From the IMG/VR virus record IMGVR_UViG_3300036770_003943, positions 62,001-126,000 of that record: 64,000 nucleotides of DNA. One strand, 5' to 3'. Numbering within the stretch: position 1 is the first letter of the stretch; each line of letters starts with the position of its first letter. The notes beneath the pieces are model-generated. The model made no database searches, was not told the DNA's origin, and worked only from the letters and a program-made list of their open reading frames with translations. Position numbers and translations under genes: made by a program. Below are positions 27,526 through 60,894 of this stretch, piece after piece.

Positions 27526-27612
27526 AATTTGGCTCCGATTTAGATTAATAGTATTTAGCTAAATCGAAGCCATGTCAATTAAATTAAACTGTTTTTAGTG
27601 TAATTGTATGAG
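27493..27612. repeat. 120-bp identical block (copy 2 of 21846-21965)
   Basis: Direct comparison. Confidence 0.9.
27531..27571 (-). promoter_or_regulatory. RBS-occluding hairpin with late promoter in the loop (identical to 21884-21924)
   Basis: Identical sequence; TAAATA at 27552-27557. Confidence 0.75.
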
Positions 27613-30600
27613 CACCGCCAGCACTAGCTGTCAAGTGGTCAATATCACTACCTATCTGTACTGGACTGCTGCGAGTATCCACTGTTCCATCACCAAGCTG
27701 GCCGTCATAGTTATATCCCCAAGCATAGAGTGCTCCTGTACTTCTAACTCCCACAGTATGCCAAGTACCAGCTTCGACAGCAGTCCATGAACCAGTGCCA
27801 ACTTGTGCTGGACTACTAGTATCAACTAAATCATTGAGTCCTAGTTGTCCGTAGTTGTTTCGTCCCCAAGCATATAAAATACTGTTTTTGGTAATGCCGG
27901 CTGTGTGCTGATTGCCTGCGGTGACTAAGGTCCAACTATCTGCTCCCACTTGTACTGGACTACTACGAGATGTAGTTGTTCCATCACCTAGTCTACCTGT
28001 GCCGTTATTACCCCATGCAAATAGTGCGCCATCACTACGAATAGCTACATTATGAGATCCACCAGCCGCAATTGCTGTCCAACTATCTGTACCTATTTGT
28101 ACTGGACTTGAACGAACAGTTGTATTACCTTGCCCTAGTTGTCCTGAAGTGTTTATACCCCAAGCAAAAAGACTGCCGTCACTACGTAAAGCTAAACTAT
28201 GGGTTCCGCCTGCCGAAATTGCTGTCCAACTACTAGTGCCTATTTGTACTGGGCTACTACGAGATGTAGCTGTTCCGTCACCTAGTCTACCTGAGCCGTT
28301 ATTACCCCAAGTAAACAGTCCGCCATCACTACGAATAGCCATGCTGTGAGCATCACCTGCTGATACTGCTGTCCAACTACTAGTGCCTACTTGTACTGGA
28401 CTTGAAAGATATGTTGTATTACCTTGTCCTAATTGTCCTGAACTATTATTACCCCAAGTAAACAGTGTGCCATCACTGCGAATGGCTAGGGTATGACTAG
28501 CACCAGCACTAGCTGCTATCCACGTGTCTGATCCTAATTTTATCGGGGTTTTTATAACAGACAGAGAATTTCCAACTAAGTTAGGTAATGTGTAAACAGC
28601 ACCACCTTGTAATTGTCCTAGGTCAGATGTGTTTCCGCTTAATCCATATGATTCTAACCAACCCCATCCATATAATAGGCCGTCTGATTTAATACCAAAA
28701 ACATTTTTAACGTTAGTCCGTAGTGGGTTTACTTTCATCATCGTCCAACTACCTGGAATTTGAGTAGGAGTGCTATTACTACTTTCATTTCCTATCCCCG
28801 ATTGGCCGTAAGTGCCTTGCCCTACATGATAGGCTGTGCCATTAGTTTTGATTAGATAATTTGCGTTTCTACCTGCTGATACTTTTTGCCAATCTGTATC
28901 TGTACCTATTTGTGTTATTAGGGATCTTGCTGTGGTATCACCTAATCCTAACTTCCCGTTAGTATTGTCTCCCCAACCCCACAATGTGCCATTAGTTTTG
29001 ATGCCTAATGTATGATTAACACCTGCCGAAACTGTGGTCCAACTAGCTGTACCCAACTGTTCTGGAGTTGTAGCTCGTGAAAGAGATAATGCTGTAATAG
29101 TTCCGATTCCGCTTGTAGATGTGCTGTTGTTAGTGCCCAATTGTCCGTAATTGTTGTATCCCCAATAATGACCAATTTTGTCTGTAGATATGGCCCACCT
29201 ACTGGCATAGTTTGAAAAATTAAATCTAGTACCAACTGCTAGCCAACTTTGACTTGAGCCGATTTGAACAGGACTCGAACTAGGATGCAGGGGTGCTGAT
29301 GTGCCATCACCTGTAAAATTATTCGCGCGGAGCCACCCCCATCTCCACAATTTTCCATCTGTAGTTATTCCATTTACACCAACGGCTCGACCATAACCAG
29401 CGGTATTGGAAGACGTAAATCCACCTATCATAGACCAGCTCTTAGTTGTATCAATTTGTTGAGGGATAAAGTAACGATAATACTCGTATGCAGGTTTAAA
29501 TAATTCACTTCCGTAACTACTGCCCCACCCCCATAGACTTCCTGCGTTATCAATAGCAAAACATTGCCATAATGATGCGTAAGCACGAGTAAAAGTAGGT
29601 ACACTATCCAATCGCGGGCCATCGGGCCAATTCCAAACGAAACTGGCACTATTGTCATTTTTGCCAATATAAGCTCTGGTGGGTGTTGGAACATAATTTC
29701 CGTCTGGCCTTGATTGAGCAGGGAACGCACCAAAAATTACAGGATTTGAAATAACATTATTGCCACCGGTGTCCCATTCAGTCTCTCTGCCAGTTGCTCT
29801 TTGTTGACTGTTAAACCATAACACACCAGACTCTGACAGATATAAACCCATAGCCTCGGCATCATAACCGCTATTTGTCCTTGATATACTAGCAAATTTC
29901 ATAGTTGGTTGTGTTCCAATAGCAGCAAATGATGTAATTTGTACTGGGGTTGTACTAGCTCCACTAGGAAACCATGATTGTTCTCCTCTCGCGCCCCATA
30001 TCCAAATTGTACCATCTGTTTTAGTACCAACAGTTCGTGTTCCAAAACTAGTATTGCTATATCTCCAATTCGACTGACCAAGACTTACATGTTTCCAAGT
30101 ATGTCCCCCAGCAACTAAAACTGGACTGCTAGTATTAGTCGTTGTTCCGTCACCCAAACCTCCAAGACGATTTAAGCCCCACATATATAAGGAACCATCA
30201 GTTCTAATAGCTGCCGAATGTGCTGCCCCTATGTACACTGCAGTCCAACTGTCTGTACCTACCTGTACTGGACTGCTACGAGCTGTAGTAGTTCCGTCAC
30301 CTAATTGATTGCCAGTACTGGCAGTAACTTTAGGTTTACCCCAAGTAAATAGTCCGCCGTCACTACGAACAGCAGCACTAATGCCCATAGTACCTACCGA
30401 AATCCAGCTATCCGTGCCGATTTGTGTTGGACTTGAGCGATTAGTTGTATCTCCTAATCCTAATTGTCCGACAACATTATTTCCCCACCCAAACAGTGCT
30501 CCGTCTGCTCTAATAGCTAAAACTGCGCCGTAACCAGTACCCGAAACATGAAAACTAACATCATTATGTTCTGTACCACCTATACTAAAGTCACGCCATT

Positions 30601-33223
30601 TGTCTGCGCCAATACGAGTTGGGGTAGTTGGGGTAGAAGCATCGTTTAGGCCTAGTTGTCCAAAGTTGTTCGTGCCCCAACCATATAGTTGCCCATCTTC
30701 TGTTAGACCTATATAGGCCGCATTGTGCTGCATTACTTTCTTGAAATTCAATGGTCCAGTATCAAATTTTATCAATACTGGACTTCTATAACGTGAATAC
30801 CAAACACTTCCGTCATTTTTAACACCAAGAAATTGTAGATCACTAGCATCAACGTGTTTCCAATAGTCGATAGTTCCTCCCACACATGGCTGTTCTCTGG
30901 CTAATTCTGAAGTACCCCAGGTGTAAAGATTTCCTTGATATATTCCAACAGTATGGCTACCGGCAGTACTTACTGTGGTCCAGCCGCTTACTTGTGTTAC
31001 GAAATTTCTAGCTGGGCTAGTATCAACTGCTGATCCGCTTCGGCCAAAGGCCGCATTGCTCCCATTTCCCAAACACCAGGGTCTGTTAAATTCATCTATT
31101 AGCGCAGCATAAGTGCCACCCTGTGCATTAACTTGTCTAGCTAATTTATATTTTCTAGTACCTATCTGTACAGGACTGCTACGATCCGTAGTGTCAGCTA
31201 GACCTAATTGACCTACATCATTTCGTCCCCACCCAAACGCATAGCCATTGATGTCAATTCCTAGGGCACTTACTGGTGTAAAGTTGCTGCCGCCACCTAT
31301 AGAGACCTGAATCCAGCTTCCTGTGCCCACTTGTACTGGACTACTACGATTGGTCGTATCTCCAACACCTAAAATACCAAAAGTATTAGCACCCCAAGTC
31401 CATAAAGTATTATCTGCCCTAATTGCAGCAGTTGTTTGATTCATAGTTATCACACTTAGCCATTTATTAGAGCCGACTTGTACAGGACTACTTAAACTTG
31501 TAGTATTTCCTAGGCCTAATTGGCCTACATCATTTTTTCCCCAAGTCCATAGTGCTCCAGCACTGTCAATGGCAGCTGAATTGTCCGACATATGAACTGC
31601 TGACCAACTTCTTGTTCCTAATTGTACAGGACTGCTACGACTTGTCATATTACCTAAACCTAGCTGTCCCTGTGTATCATTCCTTCCCCATACAAACAAC
31701 GCTCCATCTGCTCTTATAGCTGCGCTAGTGTTATTACCTGCTGATACCAATACCCAACTATTTCCTGTACCAATTTGAATAGGACTACTTTTGCCTGTAC
31801 CCACACTAGTACCATCACCTAGTTGACCGCCAGTATTATCTGCGGTCAATGACCAAGCCCAAAGAGTACCATCATTTTTAAGACCCAAATGATGACTTCG
31901 GCCCGCAGACAATTGCTTAAACCCAGACGCAAAAAGTGTAGGACTAGCTGCTGTAGTCCAAATTTCACCATTCTCTTTTAATACCTGTGTTTTGGTATTT
32001 AGACCGTTCATTCCAATATCAATTATACCGCCTTCTTGTATCATAACCGGACTGCTAACATTATCTCCATTTAGGCCGCTTGCTTTATTTGTGCCCGAAC
32101 CAGTAGCGTATAAACGATTAGAAATTCCGTCAGTACCGCCGAGGTTGGATTGGCCTGTACCACTAATGAGCAAAGAAAATCCATTACCAGCTACTACTCC
32201 GTTGCTTAACCATTCATTTGCGCCGCCTAACGCAGTTGGTACACTACGATTTGTTGTGTCTCCTAGTCCTAACTGCCCTGAACTGTTTAGTCCCCAAACA
32301 TAAAGTTGTGCGCCTACAGCAGAATAAGCAAACACATGTTTATTACCAATACTTAATGTTGAATAAAAATCACTACTACTACCGACTTGAACAGGACTTG
32401 ATCGGTTCGTTGTGTCTCCTAACCCAAGTTGTCCTTGATCATTTAATCCCCAAGCATAGAGATATCCAATATTACCATATCCTATATCAGTAATACCAAA
32501 AGTGCTTCCATATGCTGATTCTAAGACTGACCAGCTACGAACTTGGCCTAACGGATAACTCAATTGATTTTCTGCGTTTAATCCCCAACCCATTAGTTTT
32601 CCATCTGATTTTATACCAACAGTATGACTATGTCCCATACTCACAGTGGTCCAACTGCCTGCAATTGCTACTGGACTGCTACGATTGGTCGTATCTCCGA
32701 GCCCTAGATTGTTTACGGCATTGCCGCCCCAAGTAAACAATCGACCAGCTACGTCAATGGCAGCAGTTGATAAATTGTTGGCATTGACCATAGTCCAGCT
32801 GCTGGTCCCTACTTGTACTGGACTTGAACGATTGATAGTATCATCAAGCCCTAACTGCCCTGAACTGTTTAGTCCCCAGGCAAATAAGGCACTATCGCTA
32901 CGTATAGCTACTGTGTGGCTACCACCGGCCGCTACCGAAGTCCAACTATCAGTACCAACTTGTACAGGGCTGTAGTAGTTTAATGCGATATTCAAACCTA
33001 ACAAACCAACGTTTGCATGATTACCCCAGGTCCATAACGTTCCATCGCTGCGTATAGCTGCAGCATGTGAATGTCCTGATGATATAGACGTCCAACTTTG
33101 TGCTACGTCAATAGAAGACGGATCACCAAGTTCACCGCTGTTATTACTTCCCCATACATATAAAAATTTTTCAACAGTAGTAGCTGTTGCTGGTGCAGGA
33201 AATGACAATACAATATCTAACAT
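27584..33223 (-). CDS. giant RCC1/BLIP-II repeat beta-propeller protein C (1879 aa)
   Basis: Same repeats; long near-identical stretches shared with A, C-terminus shared with B. Confidence 0.9.
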   Translation of the reverse strand: MLDIVLSFPAPATATTVEKFLYVWGSNNSGELGDPSSIDVAQSWTSISSGHSHAAAIRSDGTLWTWGNHANVGLLGLNIALNYYSPVQVGTDSWTSVAAGGSHTVAIRSDSALFAWGLNSSGQLGLDDTINRSSPVQVGTSSWTMVNANNLSTAAIDVAGRLFTWGGNAVNNLGLGDTTNRSSPVAIAGSWTTVSMGHSHTVGIKSDGKLMGWGLNAENQLSYPLGQVRSWSVLESAYGSTFGITDIGYGNIGYLYAWGLNDQGQLGLGDTTNRSSPVQVGSSSDFYSTLSIGNKHVFAYSAVGAQLYVWGLNSSGQLGLGDTTNRSVPTALGGANEWLSNGVVAGNGFSLLISGTGQSNLGGTDGISNRLYATGSGTNKASGLNGDNVSSPVMIQEGGIIDIGMNGLNTKTQVLKENGEIWTTAASPTLFASGFKQLSAGRSHHLGLKNDGTLWAWSLTADNTGGQLGDGTSVGTGKSSPIQIGTGNSWVLVSAGNNTSAAIRADGALFVWGRNDTQGQLGLGNMTSRSSPVQLGTRSWSAVHMSDNSAAIDSAGALWTWGKNDVGQLGLGNTTSLSSPVQVGSNKWLSVITMNQTTAAIRADNTLWTWGANTFGILGVGDTTNRSSPVQVGTGSWIQVSIGGGSNFTPVSALGIDINGYAFGWGRNDVGQLGLADTTDRSSPVQIGTRKYKLARQVNAQGGTYAALIDEFNRPWCLGNGSNAAFGRSGSAVDTSPARNFVTQVSGWTTVSTAGSHTVGIYQGNLYTWGTSELAREQPCVGGTIDYWKHVDASDLQFLGVKNDGSVWYSRYRSPVLIKFDTGPLNFKKVMQHNAAYIGLTEDGQLYGWGTNNFGQLGLNDASTPTTPTRIGADKWRDFSIGGTEHNDVSFHVSGTGYGAVLAIRADGALFGWGNNVVGQLGLGDTTNRSSPTQIGTDSWISVGTMGISAAVRSDGGLFTWGKPKVTASTGNQLGDGTTTARSSPVQVGTDSWTAVYIGAAHSAAIRTDGSLYMWGLNRLGGLGDGTTTNTSSPVLVAGGHTWKHVSLGQSNWRYSNTSFGTRTVGTKTDGTIWIWGARGEQSWFPSGASTTPVQITSFAAIGTQPTMKFASISRTNSGYDAEAMGLYLSESGVLWFNSQQRATGRETEWDTGGNNVISNPVIFGAFPAQSRPDGNYVPTPTRAYIGKNDNSASFVWNWPDGPRLDSVPTFTRAYASLWQCFAIDNAGSLWGWGSSYGSELFKPAYEYYRYFIPQQIDTTKSWSMIGGFTSSNTAGYGRAVGVNGITTDGKLWRWGWLRANNFTGDGTSAPLHPSSSPVQIGSSQSWLAVGTRFNFSNYASRWAISTDKIGHYWGYNNYGQLGTNNSTSTSGIGTITALSLSRATTPEQLGTASWTTVSAGVNHTLGIKTNGTLWGWGDNTNGKLGLGDTTARSLITQIGTDTDWQKVSAGRNANYLIKTNGTAYHVGQGTYGQSGIGNESSNSTPTQIPGSWTMMKVNPLRTNVKNVFGIKSDGLLYGWGWLESYGLSGNTSDLGQLQGGAVYTLPNLVGNSLSVIKTPIKLGSDTWIAASAGASHTLAIRSDGTLFTWGNNSSGQLGQGNTTYLSSPVQVGTSSWTAVSAGDAHSMAIRSDGGLFTWGNNGSGRLGDGTATSRSSPVQIGTSSWTAISAGGTHSLALRSDGSLFAWGINTSGQLGQGNTTVRSSPVQIGTDSWTAIAAGGSHNVAIRSDGALFAWGNNGTGRLGDGTTTSRSSPVQVGADSWTLVTAGNQHTAGITKNSILYAWGRNNYGQLGLNDLVDTSSPAQVGTGSWTAVEAGTWHTVGVRSTGALYAWGYNYDGQLGDGTVDTRSSPVQIGSDIDHLTASAGGAHTITLKTV

Positions 33224-33922: not shown

Positions 33923-35332
33923 TTATTTGCTGTCAATCATGCTAGCAACACCTCTCCATGTGGTGCCATTGTCATCTGTAATAAATGCTAAAACATCAGT
34001 TCCGCTAGCTGTTAGCGTTGGCGCGGTTCCGCCTGGCCATTTAATACCACTCATCCAGTTTTGTGTGTAGGCACCACCATCGGTTAGCTCAAGAATAAAA
34101 TAGTTCATATAACTACTTCCGCCACTTAGACCTGACACTGTCCAAGTTGTTGTTCCAGTCGATGTCGCGCTAATATAATTTCCTGAAGCTAGGTTAATTT
34201 CGGTTGATCCAGTTACACTGCCTAGGGCATTATGCTTAGGCATAGCATTGTGAATCTGCGTTGTTCCACTAAATGTACTTGTTCCAGAACTTGTTACATT
34301 ACCAGTTACATTACCAGTTACATTACCAGTTACGCTGCCTGTAAATGTTGCGTCTGTTCCGTCTGTGCCACTTTCTAAAATTTTACTGGTTCCATTACTT
34401 GCGTAAACATCTCCAGTTACATTTCCGGTTACTGGACCACTAAATGCTGTAGCTGTAGCTGTGCCAGTTACATTGACTGGTTTGTTGAAATCCCAACTTG
34501 TTGTAGCATGTGTATACAAAATTGTTGCCGATGCGCCGTCGACTGTTAATCCTGCCCCATTCGCTGCTGCGCTATCTGCTGCTCCTTTGGCTACTGTAAT
34601 ATTTAAATCTGTTACATCTAGAGTTGTACTATTAACAGTAGTTGTTGTTCCACTAACTGTTAAATTTCCACCAACTGTTACATTCCCAGTTGTAGTAATA
34701 CCAGCAAAAGTTACGCTGTCTGTTGTAGCCACTGCTTGACCAATAGCTATACTGCCATCGGTTATGGTAACGCCAGTTCCTCCGCTGAAATGAGCACGAA
34801 CATCGCTTGCGCTTGGACCGGTATAAGTAAACACACCATCCGAATAAGATAATGAACCATCACCGCCTGAATCTGTTACACTAAAATGAGCACGAACTTC
34901 TGCGGCGCTTGGACCAGTATAGGTAATTACTCCAGTTGAGCTATTATATGATAAAGATCCGTCACCTCCTGAATCTGTTACGCTGATTGCTCCTCTAGCC
35001 AATGAATCAGTATACTGAGTTACTGTTGTTGCTATAACACCATCAGTAATTGTAATTCCAGTTCCTCCGCTAAAATGGGCACGAACATCGCTTGCGCTTG
35101 GACCAGTGTAGGTAATTACGCCAGTTGTACTGTTATATGATAAACTACCGTCGCCCCCTGAATCTGTTACGCTAATAGCAGCTCTAATAGTAGCGTTATT
35201 AGAGCCGACTTCATTAGCAGTACCGCTATAACCAACGTATAGTTTCTGTGTATCATAAGCGTAAAGTAATTCACCGTCTGCTGGACTAGCAGGAAGATTT
35301 GCTTGTAAGCCTCTTCTAATTTGTAACGCCAT
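33923..35332 (-). CDS. short fibre protein: Mtd_N-like N-terminus, repeat modules, C-terminal adaptor-like domain
   Basis: MALQIRRG..DGELLYAYDT; GDGSLSY..YTGP repeats; C-terminal IKWPGGTAPTLTASGTDVLAF. Confidence 0.75.
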   Translation of the reverse strand: MALQIRRGLQANLPASPADGELLYAYDTQKLYVGYSGTANEVGSNNATIRAAISVTDSGGDGSLSYNSTTGVITYTGPSASDVRAHFSGGTGITITDGVIATTVTQYTDSLARGAISVTDSGGDGSLSYNSSTGVITYTGPSAAEVRAHFSVTDSGGDGSLSYSDGVFTYTGPSASDVRAHFSGGTGVTITDGSIAIGQAVATTDSVTFAGITTTGNVTVGGNLTVSGTTTTVNSTTLDVTDLNITVAKGAADSAAANGAGLTVDGASATILYTHATTSWDFNKPVNVTGTATATAFSGPVTGNVTGDVYASNGTSKILESGTDGTDATFTGSVTGNVTGNVTGNVTSSGTSTFSGTTQIHNAMPKHNALGSVTGSTEINLASGNYISATSTGTTTWTVSGLSGGSSYMNYFILELTDGGAYTQNWMSGIKWPGGTAPTLTASGTDVLAFITDDNGTTWRGVASMIDSK

Positions 35333-35388
35333 TATTATCTCCTAAACTTTTTTGAAAAAAACTCTAAGTTCTTATCATTTCTTAACTT

Positions 35389-35395
35389 TATTTAT
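35389..35395 (-). promoter_or_regulatory. late promoter ATAAATA
   Basis: Motif upstream of RBS AGGAGA and ATG 35332. Confidence 0.6.
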
Positions 35396-35403
35396 CATTT
35401 AAA

Positions 35404-37419: not shown

Positions 37420-40400
37420 CTATAGACTTTTAAAAGCACTTAATTGAGCTTCTAGAGTTTCTACTTTGTCATTTAATTCCTTTACTGCTTCTACTAGTAA
37501 GGCAACCAATTTTTCGTACTTGATTGTCATATAATCTTCTCCAGATTTACTAGTTTCTTTACCGTCTACTACTTTTATATCAAAAGGCGCACGAACTACC
37601 ACTTCGGGTAGTACAGTTTTAACATCTTGAGCTAGAAGGCCAACCTGTTTCTTTTTATCTTTATAGCCAAAACTTTCAGCTATATCATTAGCAGTATAAG
37701 TTACTCCGTGTAATTGTAAAACTCTGTGTAAGGCGTCTTCAATTGGTTGTATATTTTCTTTAAGTCGTTTATCTGAATAGTAAGCTGTAATTTCATTCGT
37801 GGCACGAATTTCCCCGCTTGTACCGCTAGCACCTGTGCCTACACCTAATGAACCAAATTGAACCGATGAGCCTGTAGCAATACTTTGAGGTAAACTAAGG
37901 GTAACTGATCCAGTTGAACCGCTTACATTTACTTGATTTGAAGTACCCGATAATCCAGTTACTCCTGAGTTCGATACTGTTATTGAACCTGTGCCAGCAC
38001 TGACACTAACTCCAGTTCCAGCTGTTAATCCAGTTACTCCTGTATTTGTAATGGTAGTTCCTGAAAGACTAATACCTGTTCCATTACTAACATTTCCCGA
38101 ATTCCAAACTGTATTTCCATTCATTAGCAGCCCGTTATTACTAGGAGCTACAAAATTAAACATGTCATCGGCATCGTTTCCGACCGTAAAAGTCATTCTT
38201 TGGGCTTCGCCGCTTGCTGCTGTTAAAGTGATTGTAGCAGTATCTCCACTGCCACCAAACGCATCTGTAGGAAACGCTATTCCTGCTGTGCCGACATTAA
38301 CTTTATTAAATGTAACATTGCTAGTTGTACCGACTGCTTGGCCTATGCTAATTTGACCACTACTAATTGATACACCGGTACCAGCTGTAAAATGAGCACG
38401 CACTTCGCTGGCGTTTGGACCAGTATAAGTGATAATACCAGTAGTATTATCGTAACTTAAACTACCGTCGCCTCCTGCGTCACTAACACTAATATGAGCA
38501 CGTACTTCTGCGGCGCTTGGACCAGTGTAGGTAATTACACCAGTTGAGCTATTATATGATAACGATCCATCTCCTCCTGCGTCACTAACACTAATATGAG
38601 CACGTACTTCTGCGGCGCTTGGACCAGTGTAGGTAATTACACCAGTTGAGCTATTATAACTGAGACTGCCATCTCCACCTGCGTCACTAACACTAATATG
38701 AGCACGTACTTCTGTGGCGCTTGGACCAGTATAGGTAATAACACCAGTTGAGCTATTATAACTGAGACTGCCATCTCCACCTGAATCTGTTACACTAATA
38801 CTATTTCTTGCTCTAGCATTAGTGTAATACATTGTACCTGATGTAACTGTAGCAGCTGGATCTTCGGCTAGTTCACTAGTATTAATTGGTAAAACAACAA
38901 AGTTGGTTCCGTCTCTTGTAGCTTCCCATTTATCTGTGGTTTCATTCCAACGCAATTGAACATTAGAATCTGCTCCTCTGTTAATTTCAATTCCAGCATT
39001 TTCACTAGGAGTACCAGTGGCATTACTGTTTAATAGTATAATATTGTCAGCTAAATTAATGGTTTCTGTGTTTATAGTGGTAGTCGTTCCGCTTACAGTA
39101 AGATTTCCACTAACTGCTAAATTATTAGCCACTGTGGTAGTTCCTGAACTGGCACCTAATATCAAACTGGTAGCAGCACCGAAAGCTGTAACTGCTGTTG
39201 CGTTGGAATTTAAAAGATTAAATGAACTAGCAGTGGTAGTAATATCTCCTCCATTGACTGCTAGATCGCCGCTCAAAGTTAAATTATCTGTAATAGCAGC
39301 AGTACTGGCAAAAGAAATAGTGCCATCAACTTGTAAATTATTACGTATTCTTGTTGTTCCTGTAGTAGCTCCCATTGTAATAGTAGTTCCAGCTTGAGCA
39401 AAATTAACAGTAGTTGCGTTGGCATTAACTAAATTAATACTACTGGCTGCTGTAGTAATGCTGCTAATGGCTGATTTCAAATCCAAACTAGTTTCAGTAA
39501 CATTTAAGGTATTAACGCCATTATTGTAAAAGAATAAAGTATTTTCATTTGACCCTGCGCTTAATTCAGGAATAATATAAGTGTTTCCGTCAACATCTCG
39601 GACACCGCCTAGTGAACCCCATGAGCTTCCTGGACCGTATCCTTCAAAAGAACTAGTAGTTGTGTTATATCTAATTTGACCAACCGCAGGGGTCGAATCT
39701 CTCTGCGCTGTTGTGCCTACAGGAATCTGTATAGAATCTGTACTGTTAAAAATAATTTGATTATTATTAAATGTAGTGGTGCCAGTAGCTGCTCCTAAAT
39801 TTATAGCGGTGGCTGCACCAAAAGCATTTATAGTTGTCGCAGAGGTGTTGGCAAGATTAAATGTTGATGTACTTACAGTTAAGTCGCCGCCATCTATATT
39901 GACATCACCGTCGACATCAAGATTGTTATTAATATTAGTTGTACCGGTAGCAGCACCAATTTCAATTGTCGTTGCGGCCCCAAAGGCGTTTACTGTAGTT
40001 GAGTTAGAATTTAAAAGATTAAATGAACTAGCAGTTGTAGTTAGGTCCCCGCCATTAACTGCTAAATCTCCTGTCATTGTAGTATTACCGGTCACAGCCA
40101 AAGTACCACTTAGTGTTTGATTACCAGTAATTGCTAATGTTGTACCATTCCATCCTAGATTACTATTGGATTCTAAACCATAAGATCCGTTAACATAGGC
40201 AATGGCATTAGTTGTGGTATAATTAAGATTAACACCATTTATCGCATTAAAATATCTAGCTTCAACGTTACCGTTTACATTAACACTAAAACCATCCCAA
40301 GTTAAATTACCGCTATCAACTAAAGAACCTGCTGTCCCAACAAATACTATACGACCTGAAGTTAAATCACTTACTGTAGCACTAGCTAAAGTAGTTTCTC

Positions 40401-42453
40401 CAGTTACTCCCAGAGTTCCGACTACACTGGCATTTCCATCTACAGTGAGGCTATTGTTAATACTAGTAGTTCCAGTAGCAGCTCCAATATCTATCGAAGT
40501 GGCTGCACCAAATGCGTTAACAGTTATAGCATTTGCGTTGAGTAGATTAAAAGCTGAAGCACTAGTTGTTAGATCGCCGCCATTGACTGCTAAATTTCCG
40601 GTGATAGTGGTATTCCCAGTAAAAGTGCTGGTTCCTGAAACGGCCACAGTGCCGTCAATTACAAGATTATTTCTTACAGTTGTGGTTCCAGTTGTCGCTG
40701 CCAATGTTAAGTTTGTAGCTGCACCAAAAGCATTTAATGTAGTAGCAGCGGTATTCAATAAATTAAATGAGCTAGCAGTAGTAGTAATATCTCCGCCATT
40801 AACTGCTAAATCGCCGCTTAACGTAGTTGAATTAACAGTGACATCTAAGGTATTACCTTTTATATCAACATCCCCTCCGGTATCTCCTATTGTTACTCCA
40901 GTTATTGCACTACCTAATAATACTCTACCAACACCACTGCTTCGACCTATCTCAATTTGACCATTTCCGTTACTGTCTATAACCACATAGTTATTAGCGG
41001 TAATAGTTAAATTACCGCTATCCTTCGAATTATCATCATTAGTTATTGCTTGAACATGTATAGTTCCATCTACTGTCAAGTCTCCATTTACCAAAGCATT
41101 ACCGTCTACATCTAAATTGTTATTGATATTTGTTGTACCAGTAGCAGCACCAACCTCAAGAGTAGTTGCACTAGTGGCGAAATTAACTGTTGTAGCGTTA
41201 TTTGGCAACAAATTGAATGTAGCTGAAGTTGTTGTTATATCTCCGCCATCGACTGCTAGGTCGCCGCTTAAGGTTAAATTGTCACTAAGTGAACCTACAC
41301 TACCGAAACTTACTGTTCCATCTACTACCAGGTTATTTCTAATAGTAGTAGTACCTGACGTTGCTGCTACTGTTAAATTTGTTGCTGCGTTAAAGACATT
41401 AACTACAGTAGGAGAATTAAGAAGATTAAAGCTGCTACTAGTTGTTGTTAGGTCACCACCATTAACTGCTAGGTCACTGCTAAATCTACCAGATCCTGTA
41501 ACATCCAATTCTACAGCAGGCGATGTATTCATTATACCCACTCTACCATTTACTGAATCAATATATAATTTATCTTGAAACGTGGTCCTTGCTACACCAC
41601 TTCGAAATACCTCTGTGCTGGAAACTAAGTTATTAGTGCTTATTAAACCAACTAGTTCATGGGCATTAGTAGTTCCATAATATCTTGCTCCAATCTGAGC
41701 ATATCCAGTTACATTACCAGTAGCTCCGTAACTGCGTCCAAATGCCAGTGCTACTCCACCATCATCGGTGGCGTGAGTAGTAGCATCTGTAATACGTTTT
41801 TCTATAATTAGACCAGCTCGAATATCGCTTACCCCTTCTTGAGACTGCGTACGCTCTCTTGCAAACGTAAAAATATCAGTGGCGTCAGTTACTCCTAAAT
41901 ACTTAGAGTTAACAAATTGACCGCTAGCAACATCATATTTTACTAGTTGTCCATAGTCTAAGCCACTGATAGTCACATCAGTTAGGTCAGTGAAATTAAT
42001 CGGAAGAACATAATTAGTCCCATCGCCGTTATCAAATACCCAACGATCATCGCTGTTCCGCCAAGTTATTGTTTTATCTGTAGAACCTTTAAGTGAAATT
42101 CCTCCGCCATCAGCAGTAGTATCAGTTGGAGTAGCTGTTGCTCCTAGTTCGATTAATTTATCATCAATGGTTACCACAGTTGAGTTGACTGTGGTTGTGG
42201 TTCCGTTCACAGTAAGATTTCCACCAAGTGTTATATTACCAGAAGTATTAATGTCTCCAGTGAATCCACCACCGCCTAAATAATCGGCTACTCTGATATC
42301 TCTATAAGAAACTTCATAAACACTGCCATCATTCTTTTTCATAAAAACTTTACCGTCAGCAGTATTAAGGGCGATTTCGCCCAAGTTCATCTGCGTAGTC
42401 AATGGGGTATTCCCAGCTACACTACTTCTTTTATGTAAAATCGTATTAGACAT
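37420..42453 (-). CDS. long tail fibre with C-terminal intramolecular chaperone (peptidase S74)
   Basis: N-terminal GEIALNTADGKVF anchor; repeated GDLAVNGGDLTTT units; C-terminal SDKRLKENI..L..V..L.GV.Y and YEKLVALLVEAVKEL coiled coil. Confidence 0.88.
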   Translation of the reverse strand: MSNTILHKRSSVAGNTPLTTQMNLGEIALNTADGKVFMKKNDGSVYEVSYRDIRVADYLGGGGFTGDINTSGNITLGGNLTVNGTTTTVNSTVVTIDDKLIELGATATPTDTTADGGGISLKGSTDKTITWRNSDDRWVFDNGDGTNYVLPINFTDLTDVTISGLDYGQLVKYDVASGQFVNSKYLGVTDATDIFTFARERTQSQEGVSDIRAGLIIEKRITDATTHATDDGGVALAFGRSYGATGNVTGYAQIGARYYGTTNAHELVGLISTNNLVSSTEVFRSGVARTTFQDKLYIDSVNGRVGIMNTSPAVELDVTGSGRFSSDLAVNGGDLTTTSSSFNLLNSPTVVNVFNAATNLTVAATSGTTTIRNNLVVDGTVSFGSVGSLSDNLTLSGDLAVDGGDITTTSATFNLLPNNATTVNFATSATTLEVGAATGTTNINNNLDVDGNALVNGDLTVDGTIHVQAITNDDNSKDSGNLTITANNYVVIDSNGNGQIEIGRSSGVGRVLLGSAITGVTIGDTGGDVDIKGNTLDVTVNSTTLSGDLAVNGGDITTTASSFNLLNTAATTLNAFGAATNLTLAATTGTTTVRNNLVIDGTVAVSGTSTFTGNTTITGNLAVNGGDLTTSASAFNLLNANAITVNAFGAATSIDIGAATGTTSINNSLTVDGNASVVGTLGVTGETTLASATVSDLTSGRIVFVGTAGSLVDSGNLTWDGFSVNVNGNVEARYFNAINGVNLNYTTTNAIAYVNGSYGLESNSNLGWNGTTLAITGNQTLSGTLAVTGNTTMTGDLAVNGGDLTTTASSFNLLNSNSTTVNAFGAATTIEIGAATGTTNINNNLDVDGDVNIDGGDLTVSTSTFNLANTSATTINAFGAATAINLGAATGTTTFNNNQIIFNSTDSIQIPVGTTAQRDSTPAVGQIRYNTTTSSFEGYGPGSSWGSLGGVRDVDGNTYIIPELSAGSNENTLFFYNNGVNTLNVTETSLDLKSAISSITTAASSINLVNANATTVNFAQAGTTITMGATTGTTRIRNNLQVDGTISFASTAAITDNLTLSGDLAVNGGDITTTASSFNLLNSNATAVTAFGAATSLILGASSGTTTVANNLAVSGNLTVSGTTTTINTETINLADNIILLNSNATGTPSENAGIEINRGADSNVQLRWNETTDKWEATRDGTNFVVLPINTSELAEDPAATVTSGTMYYTNARARNSISVTDSGGDGSLSYNSSTGVITYTGPSATEVRAHISVSDAGGDGSLSYNSSTGVITYTGPSAAEVRAHISVSDAGGDGSLSYNSSTGVITYTGPSAAEVRAHISVSDAGGDGSLSYDNTTGIITYTGPNASEVRAHFTAGTGVSISSGQISIGQAVGTTSNVTFNKVNVGTAGIAFPTDAFGGSGDTATITLTAASGEAQRMTFTVGNDADDMFNFVAPSNNGLLMNGNTVWNSGNVSNGTGISLSGTTITNTGVTGLTAGTGVSVSAGTGSITVSNSGVTGLSGTSNQVNVSGSTGSVTLSLPQSIATGSSVQFGSLGVGTGASGTSGEIRATNEITAYYSDKRLKENIQPIEDALHRVLQLHGVTYTANDIAESFGYKDKKKQVGLLAQDVKTVLPEVVVRAPFDIKVVDGKETSKSGEDYMTIKYEKLVALLVEAVKELNDKVETLEAQLSAFKSL
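38392..38799. repeat. four tandem 102-bp (34-aa) fibre modules
   Basis: gtcactaacact recurs at 38479, 38581 and 38683. Confidence 0.9.
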
Positions 42454-42555
42454 CGTTTTTCCTTGAGTGGGTCAGGACATAAAGTCGCCCAACGGGTCAA
42501 ATTAACTCAGTTAATGCCCAACGGGTCAGGTTGGGAGGAAAATCCCAACGCCCAA
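42454..42555 (-). promoter_or_regulatory. GC-rich structured/repeated intergenic leader of the longest fibre gene
   Basis: 13-bp direct repeat GCCCAACGGGTCA (42487, 42516), hairpins at 42501-42515 and 42530-42549; ~51% GC by hand count; no TAAATA. Confidence 0.5.
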
Positions 42556-45261
42556 TTAAAATGTTCCACCGTCTATATTGCTTGTGCTGCTTATATTAGC
42601 TTCTAGCGTATATAGATCACCTGCAGAATTTTTAAAACTTACTTTACTACTCTCTTGTTTGATAAGAGCAGAACCAATATAAATTGTATTTCCGCCTAAA
42701 TATAAATCGCGCCATTTATAAGTGCTGCTACCTAAATCGTAGGTATTATCCGCAGAAGGAATAATACTAGCATCAAGATTGCCTAATAAACTCTTTACTT
42801 TAGAATTTGTATAATACAAATTTACAGAACCTTCTGGTACCACATCAGTGTCTGTGATTTGCTGAGCTACACCAGTGGTGAAGTCAATAACCTCTACAAT
42901 TTCGCCAGAATTTGGTGTACCACCCAGGGTTAAAGTAGTTCCTGAAACTGTATAGGTAGTAGATCTTTGTGGAATACCTGAAACTGTAACAAATAAATAT
43001 TCTCTGCTAGCAGGAGCATCATTGAGAGTAAAAACATTTGATGATCCAGTGGCGGTAAATTGTTGGCGTCTCATCGTAAATGACATCATGTCGGCCATGA
43101 TCCATTTTGATGTTGCTGAATCGTATCTTAAAATTTTATCGTTGGCTATGCCTGTTGTATTAACATCACTAATAGAACCCAAAGTGTGATTACTCAAACT
43201 ACTTACTGTTCCTGTAACTGCTCCAGTGAAAGTGGCATTAGTTCCATCAGTACCATTTTCTAAGATTTTACTAATTCCATCCGACGCATAAACATCACCG
43301 AGTAAATTAGTAGTAACTGTGGCAAATGTTACGTTATCTGTTGTCGCTACGGCTTGACCTATGCTAATTTGACCACTACTGATCGATACACCAGTGCCTG
43401 CTGTAAAATGAGCACGCACTTCGCTGGCACTTGGGCCAGTGTAGGTAATTACACCAGTCGAACTATCATATGATAACGATCCATCTCCACTTACATCAGT
43501 TACACTAATATGAGTACGCACTTCGCTGGCACTTGGGCCAGTGTAGGTAATTACACCAGTCGAACTATCATATGATAACGATCCATCTCCACTTACATCA
43601 GTTACACTTATAGCACCACGTGCTAGTGTGTTTGAAAAATATTTGTTTGTAGTTCCTTCAGTAACATCAGAAGTGGACAATAAACTTATAGGCTTTTGTA
43701 TAACAATATTACCAACCATAGAAGAATGGTTGGTACATTGATAAACATATGTGTTACCAGCTAGACTATAAGGTATTTTCCAAAATAATTTTCCTGAAAC
43801 TTTACCTTGAGCAGATGAACCTGTAGAAGTTGTTCCGTCTGTTGCTATATGAGTAAGACCAGTATTGTAATTAGAACCACCGTTAGAAACCCTTATAGCA
43901 AATGGATGTGATGCACCTTGATTTAAGTCAAAAGATATAGTTTCTCCAGCATTAACATATATTGTCGGATTATCTCCAGAATATTGATCTATATTATAAT
44001 TGAATACGGGTGTAGTAACTACTAATTGAGTAACGGCTGGAATGGCTGCTAATATGGCACGAGCATTGGTATAGTAAAGATTTGTACTGCCTTCTGTCAA
44101 GTTGTCTGTAGTATGATTACTAATATCACTCACTGTACCGGTTACATTTGCTGTAATGCCTTTATTAAAGTCAAATGTATCTGTGGCCGATACATATGTA
44201 ATTGTAGCACCAGCACCATCAATGGTAATTCCTGCTCCATTTGCTGCTGCGCTATCTAGAGCTCCTTTAGCCAATGTAATATTTAGATCTGCTATATCTA
44301 CAGTTGTACTGTTAACTGATGTAGTAGTGCCATTGACTGTAAGATTTCCGCCAATAGTTACATTTCCTGTTGTTGTGACAGCAGCAAAAGTCACGCTATC
44401 TGTTGTCGCTACGGCTTGACCTATGCTAATTTGACCACTACTGATCGATACACCAGTGCCTGCTGTAAAATGAGCACGAACTTCGCTGGCACTTGGGCCA
44501 GTGTAGGTAATTACACCAGTCGAACTATCATATGATAACGATCCATCTCCACTTACATCAGTTACACTAATATGAGCACGAACTTCTGTGGCGCTTGGAC
44601 CAGTATAGGTAATTACACCAGTCGAACTATCATATGATAACGATCCATCTCCACCGGCATCAGTTACACTTATAGCACCACGTGCTAGTGTGTTTGAAAA
44701 ATATTTGTTTGTAGTTCCTTCTGATAAATTATCAGTGGTGTGATTACTAATATCACTTACTGTTCCTGTAACATTACCAGTGACATTTCCTGTTAGATTT
44801 CCGCTAAATCCCGAGGATGCTGTAATAGTAGTTCCGGTTACTGCTGCTGCGCTTGCAGCCCCAATAATTGTGCCGTCAATGTTTCCGCCATTTATATCTA
44901 CACTAGCAAAAGTACTTGTACCTGCACTGCTAATATCGGCATTAATTGTACTTGGTAAGCCTATAGTAATAACTTGTCCGGAGACACTGGTTTCAATTTC
45001 ACTAGCTGTGCCTGAAATTTGTAATGATTGAGTTTTCAGATTTACTGTACTGGCAGTTCCTGTATCAGCTTGAATACCTAACGTGGTACTATAATTTGCC
45101 AATGAAGTATCAACGTATTCTTTGGTCGATGGGTGACTGTTTTGAGTTGGAGCAGCTACCGAAACTGTCCTTGCTGTTAGATCGAAAGTGTCTGCTATTT
45201 GACTGCCGGTTATACGAAAACTCGGATCAATCGAAATATTCTTAATCTTTGTTAATGCCAT
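42556..45261 (-). CDS. fibre-like virion protein with an inserted cupredoxin-like domain
   Basis: Four repeat modules; HPF..YQCTNHSSMVG motif; QQFTATGSSNVFTL..FVTVSGIPQ domain. Confidence 0.75.
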   Translation of the reverse strand: MALTKIKNISIDPSFRITGSQIADTFDLTARTVSVAAPTQNSHPSTKEYVDTSLANYSTTLGIQADTGTASTVNLKTQSLQISGTASEIETSVSGQVITIGLPSTINADISSAGTSTFASVDINGGNIDGTIIGAASAAAVTGTTITASSGFSGNLTGNVTGNVTGTVSDISNHTTDNLSEGTTNKYFSNTLARGAISVTDAGGDGSLSYDSSTGVITYTGPSATEVRAHISVTDVSGDGSLSYDSSTGVITYTGPSASEVRAHFTAGTGVSISSGQISIGQAVATTDSVTFAAVTTTGNVTIGGNLTVNGTTTSVNSTTVDIADLNITLAKGALDSAAANGAGITIDGAGATITYVSATDTFDFNKGITANVTGTVSDISNHTTDNLTEGSTNLYYTNARAILAAIPAVTQLVVTTPVFNYNIDQYSGDNPTIYVNAGETISFDLNQGASHPFAIRVSNGGSNYNTGLTHIATDGTTSTGSSAQGKVSGKLFWKIPYSLAGNTYVYQCTNHSSMVGNIVIQKPISLLSTSDVTEGTTNKYFSNTLARGAISVTDVSGDGSLSYDSSTGVITYTGPSASEVRTHISVTDVSGDGSLSYDSSTGVITYTGPSASEVRAHFTAGTGVSISSGQISIGQAVATTDNVTFATVTTNLLGDVYASDGISKILENGTDGTNATFTGAVTGTVSSLSNHTLGSISDVNTTGIANDKILRYDSATSKWIMADMMSFTMRRQQFTATGSSNVFTLNDAPASREYLFVTVSGIPQRSTTYTVSGTTLTLGGTPNSGEIVEVIDFTTGVAQQITDTDVVPEGSVNLYYTNSKVKSLLGNLDASIIPSADNTYDLGSSTYKWRDLYLGGNTIYIGSALIKQESSKVSFKNSAGDLYTLEANISSTSNIDGGTF

Positions 45262-45266
45262 TGAAG

Positions 45267-45313
45267 ACTCTCCTAGGGATTTAGCTTGTACTATTTACCT
45301 AAATTCTAAGAGT
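45267..45313 (-). promoter_or_regulatory. late promoter GTAAATA (45292-45298) inside an RBS-occluding irregular hairpin
   Basis: Minus strand ACTCTT AG A ATTTAG [GTAAATAGTACAAG] CTAAAT CC CT AG GAGAGT. Confidence 0.6.
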
Positions 45314-59960: not shown

Positions 59961-60034
59961 AGTTGTTCATAGAACAACTAAGAATCGTGTTTTATTCACT
60001 TCGGCTCTAAAACACGATTCTTTTTATTCTTTCT
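59961..60034 (+). terminator. tandem hairpins/terminator for the plus-strand hub operon
   Basis: AGTTGTTC-ATA-GAACAACT (59961-59979); perfect 15-bp stem AAGAATCGTGTTTTA/TAAAACACGATTCTT (59980-60022) followed by a T-rich run. Confidence 0.75.
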
Positions 60035-60060
60035 TTACTGTCGAACACTTTAGTTTAGAG

Positions 60061-60465
60061 GTATAGCTTGCCAAGGTTTTGAAGTCGTACTTTGCCCTGT
60101 TAGGGGCAAAAGTAAAAAAATAACTTGCCGGAGGCCCATTATCGTAATCTATCGCTGCAACTTTTAAAGTAAGGGCGGTTACGCTGTACCCTTTTACGCA
60201 GTCCTTATAATAACGCAGAATCAAACCAGCTGATAGATGAACCAGTTTGCTCATGTGGGTTAGAATGACTCACTAGTGCCCACTCTTTTTTGACTATACA
60301 TACACTTGCCAGCGTCTTTCAAGTCTAACGCTTCGTCCCGTCATCAACGGGATAGTGGCAATCATGTCTCCGCTACCGCTCGGAATTTCCTACCCTGCGA
60401 CATCACCAGGGATTCGGGCACCTTAATCAACTTGCCGGTGCGGGCATTATCGGTAGTGCTTGGAC
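60061..60465 (-). ncRNA. candidate large structured non-coding RNA (or origin-like DNA element); family unassigned, strand inferred
   Basis: No credible ORF; 54% GC by hand count over 60301-60460; at least 6 hairpins; bipartite direct repeat near both ends. Confidence 0.5.
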
Positions 60466-60894
60466 CTAGATTTTGCCAATAATATGGGAGCCGTGAACTC
60501 TTAGATTAATAATGTTGTTATAGTAGTCGGGAGATTCTAATACACGTCTGTTGAATTGTTCTTTTGCTTCGAGATATGAGCAGACTGCTTTGCTAGAGCC
60601 ATAATAGAGTATTTCGCGGATAAATTTGTCGGGACCTAGGGCAGCAACGTCCTTTTTTAGTTCTTCGCTGCTGCCCCAATATTCTTGCCAATCGCTGTCT
60701 ATTTTAGATTTTATACGTTTGCGTTTTTTAGTGCCGTTTTTGAGTTTTATAGTTTTGTAAGTTGTTTTAGAGAATTTTGCCAGTTTTTTGCCAATATACA
60801 TACGGCCTGTGATCGTATTGGTAATACAATAAACATATCCAACACAGTCGTTGGGAAGTTGTTCTACTAGTTTACCTTCAAATACCCATGTCAT
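60466..60894 (-). CDS. short single-domain GIY-YIG family endonuclease
   Basis: GYVYCITN..TGRMYIGKK, YWGSS, F.REIL, YLE, YYN. Confidence 0.85.
   Translation of the reverse strand: MTWVFEGKLVEQLPNDCVGYVYCITNTITGRMYIGKKLAKFSKTTYKTIKLKNGTKKRKRIKSKIDSDWQEYWGSSEELKKDVAALGPDKFIREILYYGSSKAVCSYLEAKEQFNRRVLESPDYYNNIINLRVHGSHIIGKI

What the first reader, a model, noticed from the sequence alone, without database searches (positions are those of the whole stretch)
42454..42555. GC-rich repeat and hairpin element as the leader of the longest tail fibre
Seen: ~51% GC versus 20% in a typical spacer (35341-35400). GCCCAACGGGTCA occurs twice (period 29), flanking the hairpin ATTAAC-TCA-GTTAAT; there is a third GGGTCAGG half-site (42469-42476) and a GTTGGGA/TCCCAAC hairpin. 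The minus strand has four TTGGG runs and three TGACCC motifs. It is one of the few long spacers in the fibre region with no TAAATA. Inference: a repeated RNA or DNA operator, attenuator or riboswitch-like element, or a long-loop G-quadruplex, controlling the main fibre; GGG/CCC pairings are mutually exclusive.
Basis: partly seen in the sequence, partly recalled or inferred. Interest (0 to 1): 0.6.

Follow-up and report, generated by a model that had tools for sequence, protein, structure and literature searches.

The report
Conserved three-hairpin RNA between fibre genes
The GC-rich spacer before the 1677-residue tail-fibre gene is a real, previously uncatalogued structured element: three tandem hairpins with an invariant base, kept by compensatory mutations in a clade of uncultured giant T4-related phages, and most likely a post-transcriptional control or processing site on the fibre mRNA.

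Summary
Genes here lie on the minus strand. The 102-nt spacer (42454-42555, GC 0.50 against 0.16-0.38 elsewhere) separates a 901-aa structural gene from the 1677-aa fibre gene.

On the mRNA strand it holds three tandem units, each GGG-C-[hairpin]-YUGA-CCC, joined by 3-nt linkers. It starts 2 nt after the stop codon and ends 4 nt before the Shine-Dalgarno.

Nine further distinct versions occur at the same junction in viral and metagenome contigs. The flanking proteins are only about 38% identical, yet the bases are invariant and the upper stems differ while staying paired. On the MAFFT alignment 96.4% of cells pair, 14 of 29 pairs show double changes, and 0 of 500 shuffles reach the covariation score.

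It is single-copy per genome. It has no late-promoter word and no terminator. It matches no Rfam family and is absent from five cultured jumbo relatives. The host phage is a PA5oct/RaK2-type jumbo myovirus.

G-quadruplex, attenuator, riboswitch, thermometer, REP and CRISPR-like readings fail their defining tests.

My best reading, by inference, is a sense-strand intercistronic RNA whose invariant unpaired base nucleotides and fixed spacing mark a protein-recognition or processing array. That array would tune fibre expression relative to the upstream gene.

The parts
42556..45261 (-). Upstream cistron: a 901-aa structural or fibre-connector protein. Its N-terminus is MALTKIKNISIDP and its C-terminus is ...NIDGGTF*.
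   Evidence: ORF. PHROG 697 (structural protein) and 677 (baseplate wedge tail-fibre connector). Homologues of 901-1963 aa sit before the element in relatives.
45292..45297 (-). TAAATA word (T4-type late-promoter-like) in the 68-nt spacer upstream of the 901-aa gene. It is the presumed promoter of a bicistronic transcript.
   Evidence: Spacer table. The promoter role is an inference from the same word recurring in most other spacers and from T4-like late-promoter knowledge.
42556..42558 (-). TAA stop codon of the upstream cistron, 2 nt before unit 1.
42523..42553 (-). Unit 1: GGG-C-GUUGGGA-[UUUUCC]-UCCCAAC-CUGA-CCC. It has a 7-bp GC-rich upper stem.
   Evidence: Folded alone it gives -12.5 kcal/mol, z = -2.4, with the base paired. 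The stem covaries in homologues.
42520..42522 (-). Linker 1 (GUU). All 19 linkers in the family are exactly 3 nt, with variable sequence.
42494..42519 (-). Unit 2: GGG-C-AUUAAC-[UGA]-GUUAAU-UUGA-CCC.
   Evidence: GUUAAC-UGA-GUUAAC is shared with L027, L029, L076 and L149. Other sequences have different but paired stems.
42491..42493 (-). Linker 2 (GUU).
42469..42490 (-). Unit 3: GGG-C-GAC-[UUUAU]-GUC-CUGA-CCC. This is the weakest hairpin in this phage, with 3 bp against 4-9 bp in homologues.
42460..42464 (-). Shine-Dalgarno AAGGA of the fibre gene. It lies 4 nt after unit 3 and 6 nt before the AUG, and is not part of any conserved helix.
   Evidence: AAGGA or AGGAG sits at the equivalent place in all 10 sequences.
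37420..42453 (-). Downstream cistron: the 1677-aa tail fibre. Its N-terminus is MSNTILHKRSS... and it has a C-terminal Peptidase_S74 intramolecular chaperone.
   Evidence: PHROG tail-fibre families. Pfam PF13884 at 1.1e-15. Homologous fibres of 532-1677 aa follow the element in relatives.

Best explanation
SHOWN:
- The spacer is a conserved, single-copy, structured element of two or three tandem stem-loops.
- It sits in the untranslated gap of a promoter-less gene pair, the 901-aa structural gene followed by the fibre gene, in an uncultured clade of T4-related jumbo phages.
- Each unit has an invariant base. This is a 5' G(G/A)G-C and a 3' YUGA-C(C/U)C, in which GGG pairs with CCC. The C, U, G and A never vary.
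- Above the base is a fast-evolving upper stem that is kept paired by compensatory changes.
- Units are always joined by exactly 3 nt.
- The array begins 0-8 nt after the stop codon and ends 4-9 nt before an exposed Shine-Dalgarno.

INFERRED:
- It acts as RNA on the mRNA (sense) strand.
- The invariant unpaired base nucleotides and the fixed spacing mark each hairpin as a recognition module for a sequence-specific RNA-binding protein or endoribonuclease, either phage-encoded or host. The array would bind several copies cooperatively.
- Occupancy or cleavage would uncouple the two cistrons and set how much distal fibre is made relative to the upstream protein. Two routes are possible.
  - Unit 3 abuts the 30S landing zone, so a bound protein could occlude the fibre ribosome-binding site.
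  - Cutting in the array would leave the strong GC-rich unit 1 as a protective 3' cap on the upstream message, and units 2 and 3 as a 5' cap on the fibre message.
- Unit 1 lies inside the footprint of the terminating ribosome, so upstream translation should transiently open it.
For: Homologous spacers at the same junction.
- They lie between '...IDGG[ST][FY]*' and 'MANTILHKRSS', in 9 further distinct sequences from viral and metagenome contigs.
- The flanking proteins are only 38-39% identical between the window and L002.
- All 29 units parse as base plus abutting hairpin plus base, and all 19 linkers are 3 nt.

Structure and covariation.
- RNAalifold on an unguided MAFFT alignment recovers the three hairpins with their bases, and 14 of 29 pairs are compensatory.
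- Pair counts on the MAFFT alignment: 96.4% of cells paired and covariation 0.375 against 0.165, with 0 of 500 shuffles reaching it. Slid controls pair at 22-50%.
- On the CM-fitted alignment: 97.8% paired and 16 of 29 pairs with double changes.
- The unit-1 base itself covaries, GGG:CCC in 3 sequences against GAG:CUC in 7.
- Most homologues adopt exactly this fold as their single-sequence MFE, with the SD unpaired.

Strand.
- Upper stems contain 145 Watson-Crick pairs, 3 G.U pairs and 0 A.C pairs.
- 7 of 9 distinct tetraloops are GNRA on the sense strand.
- All neighbouring genes are on this strand.

Copy number and context.
- One copy per genome in the window's record and in 5 relatives.
- No late-promoter word, sigma-70 match or terminator lies in the spacer, so the element is inside a bicistronic mRNA.

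Invariance of the unpaired C/YUGA nucleotides and of the linker length is not needed for a merely stable hairpin. This is the argument for specific recognition, and it is an inference.
Against: - No binding protein or nuclease is identified. The available 65% of the genome has no RNase III, RegA or IS200-type HUH gene (the RegA search had no positive control).
- The antisense strand folds at least as well. The window gives -30.6 against -28 kcal/mol, and the alignment consensus gives -26.3 against -17.7 kcal/mol. On the antisense strand the base becomes a neat 4-bp stem with an invariant U.G wobble and a 3-nt bulge. The strand call therefore rests on only 3 G.U pairs, the GNRA loops and gene orientation.
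- The helices are 7-14 bp, too short for a classical RNase III site.
- The SD is not sequestered by the element itself, so any translational effect needs a trans factor.
- The window's own whole-spacer fold is not unusually stable (z = -0.6).
- Only 10 distinct sequences from one clade are known, so several 'double changes' share ancestry.
Confidence: 0.5

Rival explanations
1. A passive RNA insulator or stabiliser with no dedicated trans factor. The hairpins fill the untranslated gap so that Rho and RNase E find no single-stranded RNA. They block 3'-5' exonucleases and 70S scanning, as REP/BIME elements do between malE and malF. Because unit 1 lies within 15 nt of the stop codon, it may also dampen upstream translation termination, as reported for REP elements (Liang, Rudd and Deutscher 2015, cited from my own knowledge).
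For: - The array occupies almost the whole gap, from 0-8 nt after the stop to 4-9 nt before the SD.
- Unit 1 is always the longest and most GC-rich hairpin.
- There is no promoter or terminator in the spacer.
- No phage-encoded RNA-binding candidate was found.
Against: - Pure stability does not explain the invariant unpaired C/YUGA nucleotides in 29 of 29 units, the exact 3-nt linkers in 19 of 19 junctions, or the invariant GGG:CCC base while the upper stems vary freely.
- Related phages manage with 2-12-nt spacers at the same junction.
Confidence: 0.22
2. A DNA-level or antisense-strand element. The candidates are:
- single-stranded-DNA hairpins or a cruciform serving as a recombination junction for fibre-module exchange;
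- a REP/IS200-like HUH target;
- an origin or primase site;
- a cis-antisense RNA covering the fibre ribosome-binding site.
For: - The antisense strand folds more stably, with a tidy base carrying an invariant U.G wobble.
- Covariation alone cannot tell RNA from ssDNA.
- Mosaic relatives show a break just downstream. L029 against L076 gives 93% identity upstream, 98% in the element and 71% downstream. L064 against L131 gives 89/94/77.
- Two contigs end at or in the element.
Against: - The wobble pairs in the evolving stems are G.U on the sense strand only (3 against 0), and GNRA loops are on the sense strand.
- No + strand promoter match lies near the element.
- There is a single locus per genome and no Y1/HUH transposase, so it is not REP-like.
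- The conserved blocks are at most 14 nt, too short for homologous exchange.
- The mosaic break is equally explained by the usual conserved fibre N-terminus followed by a variable shaft.
Confidence: 0.15
3. A ligand- or temperature-sensing switch (riboswitch or RNA thermometer), or a transcription attenuator that uses alternative GGG/CCC pairings.
For: - Alternative inter-unit pairings are possible in the window and L002, where the linkers are GUU.
- The element is tandem hairpins in an untranslated region.
Against: - There is no Rfam match.
- There is no U-tract terminator.
- The SD is outside all helices and mostly unpaired.
- The alternative pairings are not conserved, because the linkers vary.
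- There is no conserved multi-helix junction or conserved loop that could form a pocket.
Confidence: 0.05
4. A long-loop G-quadruplex on the mRNA strand.
For: The window has four GGG runs on the minus strand.
Against: - The first run is GAG in 7 of 10 homologues, and L027 lacks the third unit.
- Every GGG has a covarying CCC partner.
- The loops would be 4-27 nt.
Confidence: 0.01

Closest known systems
Phage T7 intercistronic RNase III processing hairpins (R1.1 and others)
   Same: Both are conserved stem-loops with an asymmetric internal loop. Both lie between cistrons of a phage polycistronic mRNA and do not terminate transcription. In T7 the hairpin left after cutting stabilises the upstream message.
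   Different: T7 sites are single hairpins of about two helical turns. Here there are three tandem short hairpins of 7-14 bp including the base, with variable tops. No RNase III gene was found in the phage, and cleavage is untested.
REP/BIME extragenic palindromes of bacteria
   Same: Both are extragenic hairpins placed right after stop codons and occurring in tandem. They have known effects on the stability and translation of the upstream cistron.
   Different: REPs are dispersed in tens to hundreds of copies, carry a GTAG-type head and are linked to RAYT transposases. This element is one locus per genome, has no such gene, and its units are all in direct orientation.
Coat-protein and repressor operator hairpins (MS2/PP7 operators; T4 RegA, gp32 and gp43 operators)
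   Same: Both are small hairpins next to a ribosome-binding site in which invariant unpaired nucleotides, including a predicted bulged A, are embedded in a variable-sequence helix. That is the signature of protein recognition.
   Different: Those operators are single and include the SD or AUG. Here there are 2-3 copies upstream of an exposed SD, and no partner protein is known.
ROSE-type RNA thermometers and other tandem-hairpin 5' UTRs
   Same: Both have two to four consecutive hairpins before a start codon.
   Different: In ROSE the last hairpin sequesters the SD and AUG. Here the SD lies outside and is unpaired.
PeSL cassettes of T4-type phages (promoter-early stem-loops proposed to mediate modular shuffling; cited from my own knowledge)
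   Same: Both are conserved intergenic stem-loop motifs at module boundaries in T4-related genomes, next to genes that are exchanged.
   Different: PeSLs are multicopy and carry an early promoter. This element is single-copy, promoter-less and in a late structural operon.

Membership tests
Conserved structured RNA motif (generic criteria used for Rfam candidates) | Homologues in several genomes, with base pairs maintained by compensatory substitutions beyond controls. | tested here: met
   - There are 10 distinct sequences.
- On the MAFFT alignment 14 of 29 pairs show double changes, 96.4% of cells are paired, and 0 of 500 shuffles reach the covariation score.
- On the CM-fitted alignment 16 of 29 pairs show double changes.
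- Slid controls pair at 22-50%.
Any described Rfam family (riboswitches included) | A covariance-model match. | tested here: not met
   - There is no hit at gathering score.
- Only noise appears at E up to 10 on the element (SNORD57 at E 0.97).
- There are 0 hits at E up to 1 on six homologous loci.
Intrinsic terminator / attenuator | A GC-rich hairpin followed directly by a U-tract. | tested here: not met
   The scan finds no terminator-like site in 42454-42555. The units are followed by GUU-GGG or ACUCAAGGA.
G-quadruplex | Four conserved G-runs free to form tetrads. | tested here: not met
   The first run is GAG in 7 of 10 sequences, L027 has two units, and all the runs pair with CCC or CUC.
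RNase III processing site (T7 type) | A double-stranded helix of roughly two turns (about 20 bp), and cleavage in or next to the internal loop. | tested here: not met
   The helix is 3+1 bp at the base plus a 3-11-position upper stem, so at most about 15 bp. Cleavage itself is not testable here.
REP/BIME | Many dispersed copies per genome. | tested here: not met
   There is one locus in the 231,776-bp record and one in each of 5 related records.
REP/BIME | An associated RAYT / IS200-like Y1 transposase. | tested here: not met
   PF01797 is absent from the record, while the positive controls gave hits. The record is only 65% complete.
ROSE-like RNA thermometer | The SD and AUG are base-paired in the 3'-most hairpin. 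| tested here: not met
   The SD begins 4-9 nt after the last base. Its mean probability of being unpaired is 0.5-0.96 in 9 of 10 sequences, and 0.36 in the window through non-conserved pairs.
Protein-binding translational operator (MS2/PP7/RegA kind) | Invariant unpaired nucleotides in a hairpin whose helix sequence is free to vary. | tested here: met
   C, U, G and A of the base are invariant in 29 of 29 units, while the upper stems vary with covariation.
Protein-binding translational operator (MS2/PP7/RegA kind) | A cognate binding protein, and an operator that overlaps the initiation region. | not testable with these tools
   No partner is identified. RegA is not detected, but that search had no positive control. 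The SD and AUG lie outside the hairpins.
CRISPR-like mini-array / RNA anti-CRISPR | Near-identical repeats separated by unique, non-palindromic spacers. | tested here: not met
   The repeated block is only about 14 nt, and the intervening sequences are themselves perfect hairpins of 11-24 nt.
Kink-turn | Tandem sheared G.A pairs, with GA on both strands, next to a 3-nt bulge. | tested here: not met
   The 5' strand of the internal loop is a single C. Only the 3' strand carries UGA.

The most novel reading that the evidence does not exclude
The array is a new class of phage translational operator or processing signal. It would be a multimerised 'base-hairpin' code, read through the invariant GGG-C / YUGA-CCC base with 3-nt spacing, by a still unknown RNA-binding protein or nuclease of jumbo phages or their hosts. 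That factor would set the stoichiometry of tail-fibre subunits. A variant of this reading is that the array is cut at the linkers into discrete small hairpin RNAs.
Probability: 0.3. Interest if true: 0.7.

Novelty: new variant of a known kind. Interest (0 to 1): 0.55.

Why it matters
- Structured cis-acting RNAs in phage late operons are poorly charted, and none is described for tail-fibre genes of the giant T4-related phages.
- The covariation support for this motif is clean, and it has a simple, testable architecture: an invariant base, free tops and fixed spacing.
- It sits exactly where the ratio of two fibre components, and hence virion assembly and host recognition, could be tuned.
- It is a ready candidate for a new RNA family.
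- The base-hairpin could also be a handle for finding a new RNA-binding protein or nuclease.
- It is a practical point for anyone engineering fibre modules in such phages, because swapping the downstream gene without the element may change expression.

Tried and rejected
Database scans that mostly returned noise.
- Exact-pattern scans of viral, metagenome and genome collections returned mostly chance hits, collagen-like Gly-X-Y repeats on the opposite strand, and unrelated tandem repeats.
- CM re-screening of all fetched loci found only the same family.
- L270, in a Clostridium MAG, scored 34 bits. It is a REP-like 17-nt repeat array around an IS200/RAYT-like ORF, matched only because the search pattern selected it.

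Relatives without the element.
- Five cultured jumbo relatives have no copy: RsoM2USA, Phosso, Vibrio 2.275.O, PA5oct and pEa_SNUABM_19.
- RsoM2USA has a 12-nt spacer at a junction with the same fibre N-terminus.

Ideas tested and rejected.
- Read-through, bypass or fusion of the two ORFs is rejected. The stop-to-ATG distance is a multiple of 3 in only 4 of 10 sequences, and the downstream gene keeps its own SD and AUG.
- Mimicry of rRNA was checked on the E. coli rrnB operon. No base-hairpin equivalent was found there.
- RNase III, RegA and the Y1 transposase were not found in the record.

Dead ends.
- Literature searches found nothing on such an element.
- My initial guess that this was a cyanophage, from weak blastn and PHROG hits, was wrong. 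The capsid places it with PA5oct/RaK2-type jumbo phages.

Full report
**1. What is at the coordinates**

All large genes in this part of the window lie on the minus strand. The interval 42454-42555 is the 102-nt gap between two features. One is the TAA stop (42558-42556) of a 901-aa structural protein, which hits PHROG 697 and 677, 'baseplate wedge tail fibre connector'. The other is the ATG (42453) of a 1677-aa fibre, which hits several PHROG tail-fibre families and has a C-terminal Peptidase_S74 chaperone.

The spacer has GC 0.50. Every other spacer of the structural block has GC 0.16-0.38 and usually carries an NATAAATA/TAAATA word. This spacer has none. No sigma-70-like or terminator-like site falls inside it. 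The fibre gene is therefore most simply co-transcribed with the 901-aa gene, whose own upstream spacer has GGTAAATAG. That step is an inference.

The 1677-aa ORF is not the longest in the window. Three RCC1-repeat proteins of 1862-2244 aa are longer.

**2. Anatomy on the mRNA strand**

Read 5' to 3' on the minus strand, the spacer has these parts:

- UAA, then UU;
- unit 1: GGG-C-GUUGGGA(UUUUCC)UCCCAAC-CUGA-CCC;
- linker GUU;
- unit 2: GGG-C-AUUAAC(UGA)GUUAAU-UUGA-CCC;
- linker GUU;
- unit 3: GGG-C-GAC(UUUAU)GUC-CUGA-CCC;
- ACUC, then the Shine-Dalgarno AAGGA, then AAAACG, then AUG.

On its own the window sequence is not thermodynamically remarkable as a whole (z = -0.6). The core of 85 nt has z = -2.2, and unit 1 alone has z = -2.4.

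**3. Relatives**

An exact search for the doubled 13-mer found one viral contig, L002. It carries the same blocks before a homologous fibre, but with three entirely different hairpins between the blocks.

A protein-guided search with the fibre N-terminus gave 73 junctions. The element is present in a subset of them, and a metagenome pattern scan added two more versions. In all there are 10 distinct sequences: the window, L002, L027, L029, L076, L149, L031, L053, L064 and L131.

All ten sit between a gene ending '...IDGG[ST][FY]*' and a fibre starting 'M[AS]NTILHKRSS'. The upstream genes are 901-1963 aa and the fibres are 532-1677 aa.

Between the window and L002 the flanking proteins are only 38-39% identical, yet the base blocks are identical.

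Other phages with the same protein junction have spacers of 2-12 nt or an unrelated palindrome.

The element is single-copy in the window's 231,776-bp record and in five related records. Shuffled genomes give 0.3 units on average. It is absent from five cultured jumbo relatives.

The capsid (66-69% identity to Phosso, PA5oct and Vibrio 2.275.O) and the Gp23 and Portal_T4 domains place the phage among T4-related jumbo myoviruses.

**4. Structure and covariation**

All 29 units parse as G(G/A)G-C-[hairpin that abuts the base]-YUGA-C(C/U)C. All 19 linkers are exactly 3 nt but vary in sequence: GUU, GCA, GCU, ACA, AUA and ACC.

RNAalifold on an unguided MAFFT alignment predicts the three hairpins. 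In each, the base is GGG:CCC plus a C:G pair, with a bulged A and a YU bulge. Fourteen of 29 pairs have double changes.

| Measure | MAFFT alignment | CM-fitted alignment |
|---|---|---|
| Cells paired | 96.4% | 97.8% |
| Pairs with double changes | 14 of 29 | 16 of 29 |
| Covariation score, observed against shuffled | 0.375 against 0.165 | 0.451 against 0.163 |
| Shuffles reaching the observed score | 0 of 500 | 0 of 500 |
| Cells paired in slid controls | 22-50% | 22-49% |

The unit-1 base itself covaries. It is GGG:CCC in the window, L002 and L027, and GAG:CUC in the other seven, though this may be a single evolutionary event.

In most homologues the single-sequence MFE is exactly this fold, and the SD is unpaired.

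**5. Which strand, and RNA or DNA**

For the sense strand:

- The evolving stems contain 145 Watson-Crick pairs, 3 G.U pairs and no A.C pair.
- 7 of 9 distinct tetraloops are GNRA.
- The strand is certainly transcribed as part of a late mRNA.

Against the sense strand:

- The antisense strand folds more stably.
- On the antisense strand the base becomes a 4-bp stem with an invariant U.G wobble and a 3-nt bulge.

I put sense-strand RNA at roughly 0.7-0.75. The antisense or DNA reading is kept as a rival.

**6. Function**

What is shown is a conserved, single-locus, structured element inside a promoter-less gene pair. It abuts the stop codon on one side and an exposed ribosome-binding site on the other.

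Three features are not required for mere stability: the invariance of the unpaired base nucleotides, the invariance of the GGG:CCC base while the tops vary freely, and the fixed 3-nt spacing. They point to sequence-specific, probably cooperative, recognition by a protein or nuclease. From position, the likely outputs are two:

- control of 30S access to the fibre start, because unit 3 ends 15 nt before the AUG in the window;
- processing that leaves unit 1, always the longest and most GC-rich hairpin, as a 3' cap on the upstream message.

These steps are inferred, and no partner was found. The main rival is a passive insulator or stabiliser that works like REP elements.

G-quadruplex, attenuator, riboswitch, thermometer, REP, CRISPR-like and kink-turn readings each fail a defining feature, as set out in the membership table.

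Mosaic pairs (L029 against L076 with 93/98/71% identity upstream, in the element and downstream; L064 against L131 with 89/94/77) show that the element travels with the upstream gene while the fibre body is exchanged or diverges.

**7. Novelty and verdict**

No Rfam family matches and no paper was found. The kind of thing, an intercistronic structured RNA in a phage late operon, is known. This architecture, and its association with fibre genes of jumbo phages, is not.

The finding is real and moderately interesting.

Noticed in passing
window 60302-60446 (-): A full-length match to the Rfam Polynucleobacter-1 RNA motif (55 bits against a gathering score of 37, E 5.6e-9). It lies between small minus-strand ORFs at 60466-60894 and 60024-60254. 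A phage copy of this orphan motif may hint at host or function.
   Followed up: partly
window 15144-33223 (-), leaders at 21879-21936 and 27526-27583: Three paralogous giant RCC1-repeat proteins (2244, 1862 and 1879 aa) share near-identical N-termini. Two have identical 58-nt leaders with a 13-bp hairpin whose loop holds the late-promoter-like word CTAAATAC.
   Followed up: no
L051, L054, L060, L061, L072, L081, L084, L090 (about 40-100 nt before the match start): In other phage clades with the same '...IDGGTF* / MANT...' fibre junction, the spacer carries a short palindrome centred on CTATATAG or GTATATAC. This may be a clade-specific promoter or operator.
   Followed up: no
L149:1-126 and L085/L102 contig end: Two independent contigs begin or end exactly at or inside the element. 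L149 starts 1 nt before the stop codon, and L085 starts inside unit 2. This could be an assembly break at a hypervariable fibre boundary or a real molecular end.
   Followed up: no
L270:1536-2290 (Clostridium sp. MAG contig): An IS200/RAYT-like ORF (containing ...NYVIMPNHIHLLI...) is flanked on both sides by arrays of a 17-nt repeat, TTGACCCGTAGGGCGGC. Each array ends in a GTAG-headed palindrome, which makes it a REP-like system. It shares the TGACCC-NNN-GGGC word only because the search pattern selected for it.
   Followed up: partly
L006, L013, L014 and many of L112-L231: The word TGACCCGTTGGGC recurs in collagen-like Gly-X-Y repeat genes of phages, coding on the opposite strand. This is a trap for pattern searches with this motif.
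   Followed up: yes
window 5556-8795, 10433-10951, 33923-35332 (-): Three further fibre-like ORFs start with a related N-terminal motif (MAI.IK...GELA.NT.DG / MALQIRRG...GELLY). Each has its own TAAATA-bearing spacer. Only the 1677-aa fibre lacks such a promoter word.
   Followed up: partly
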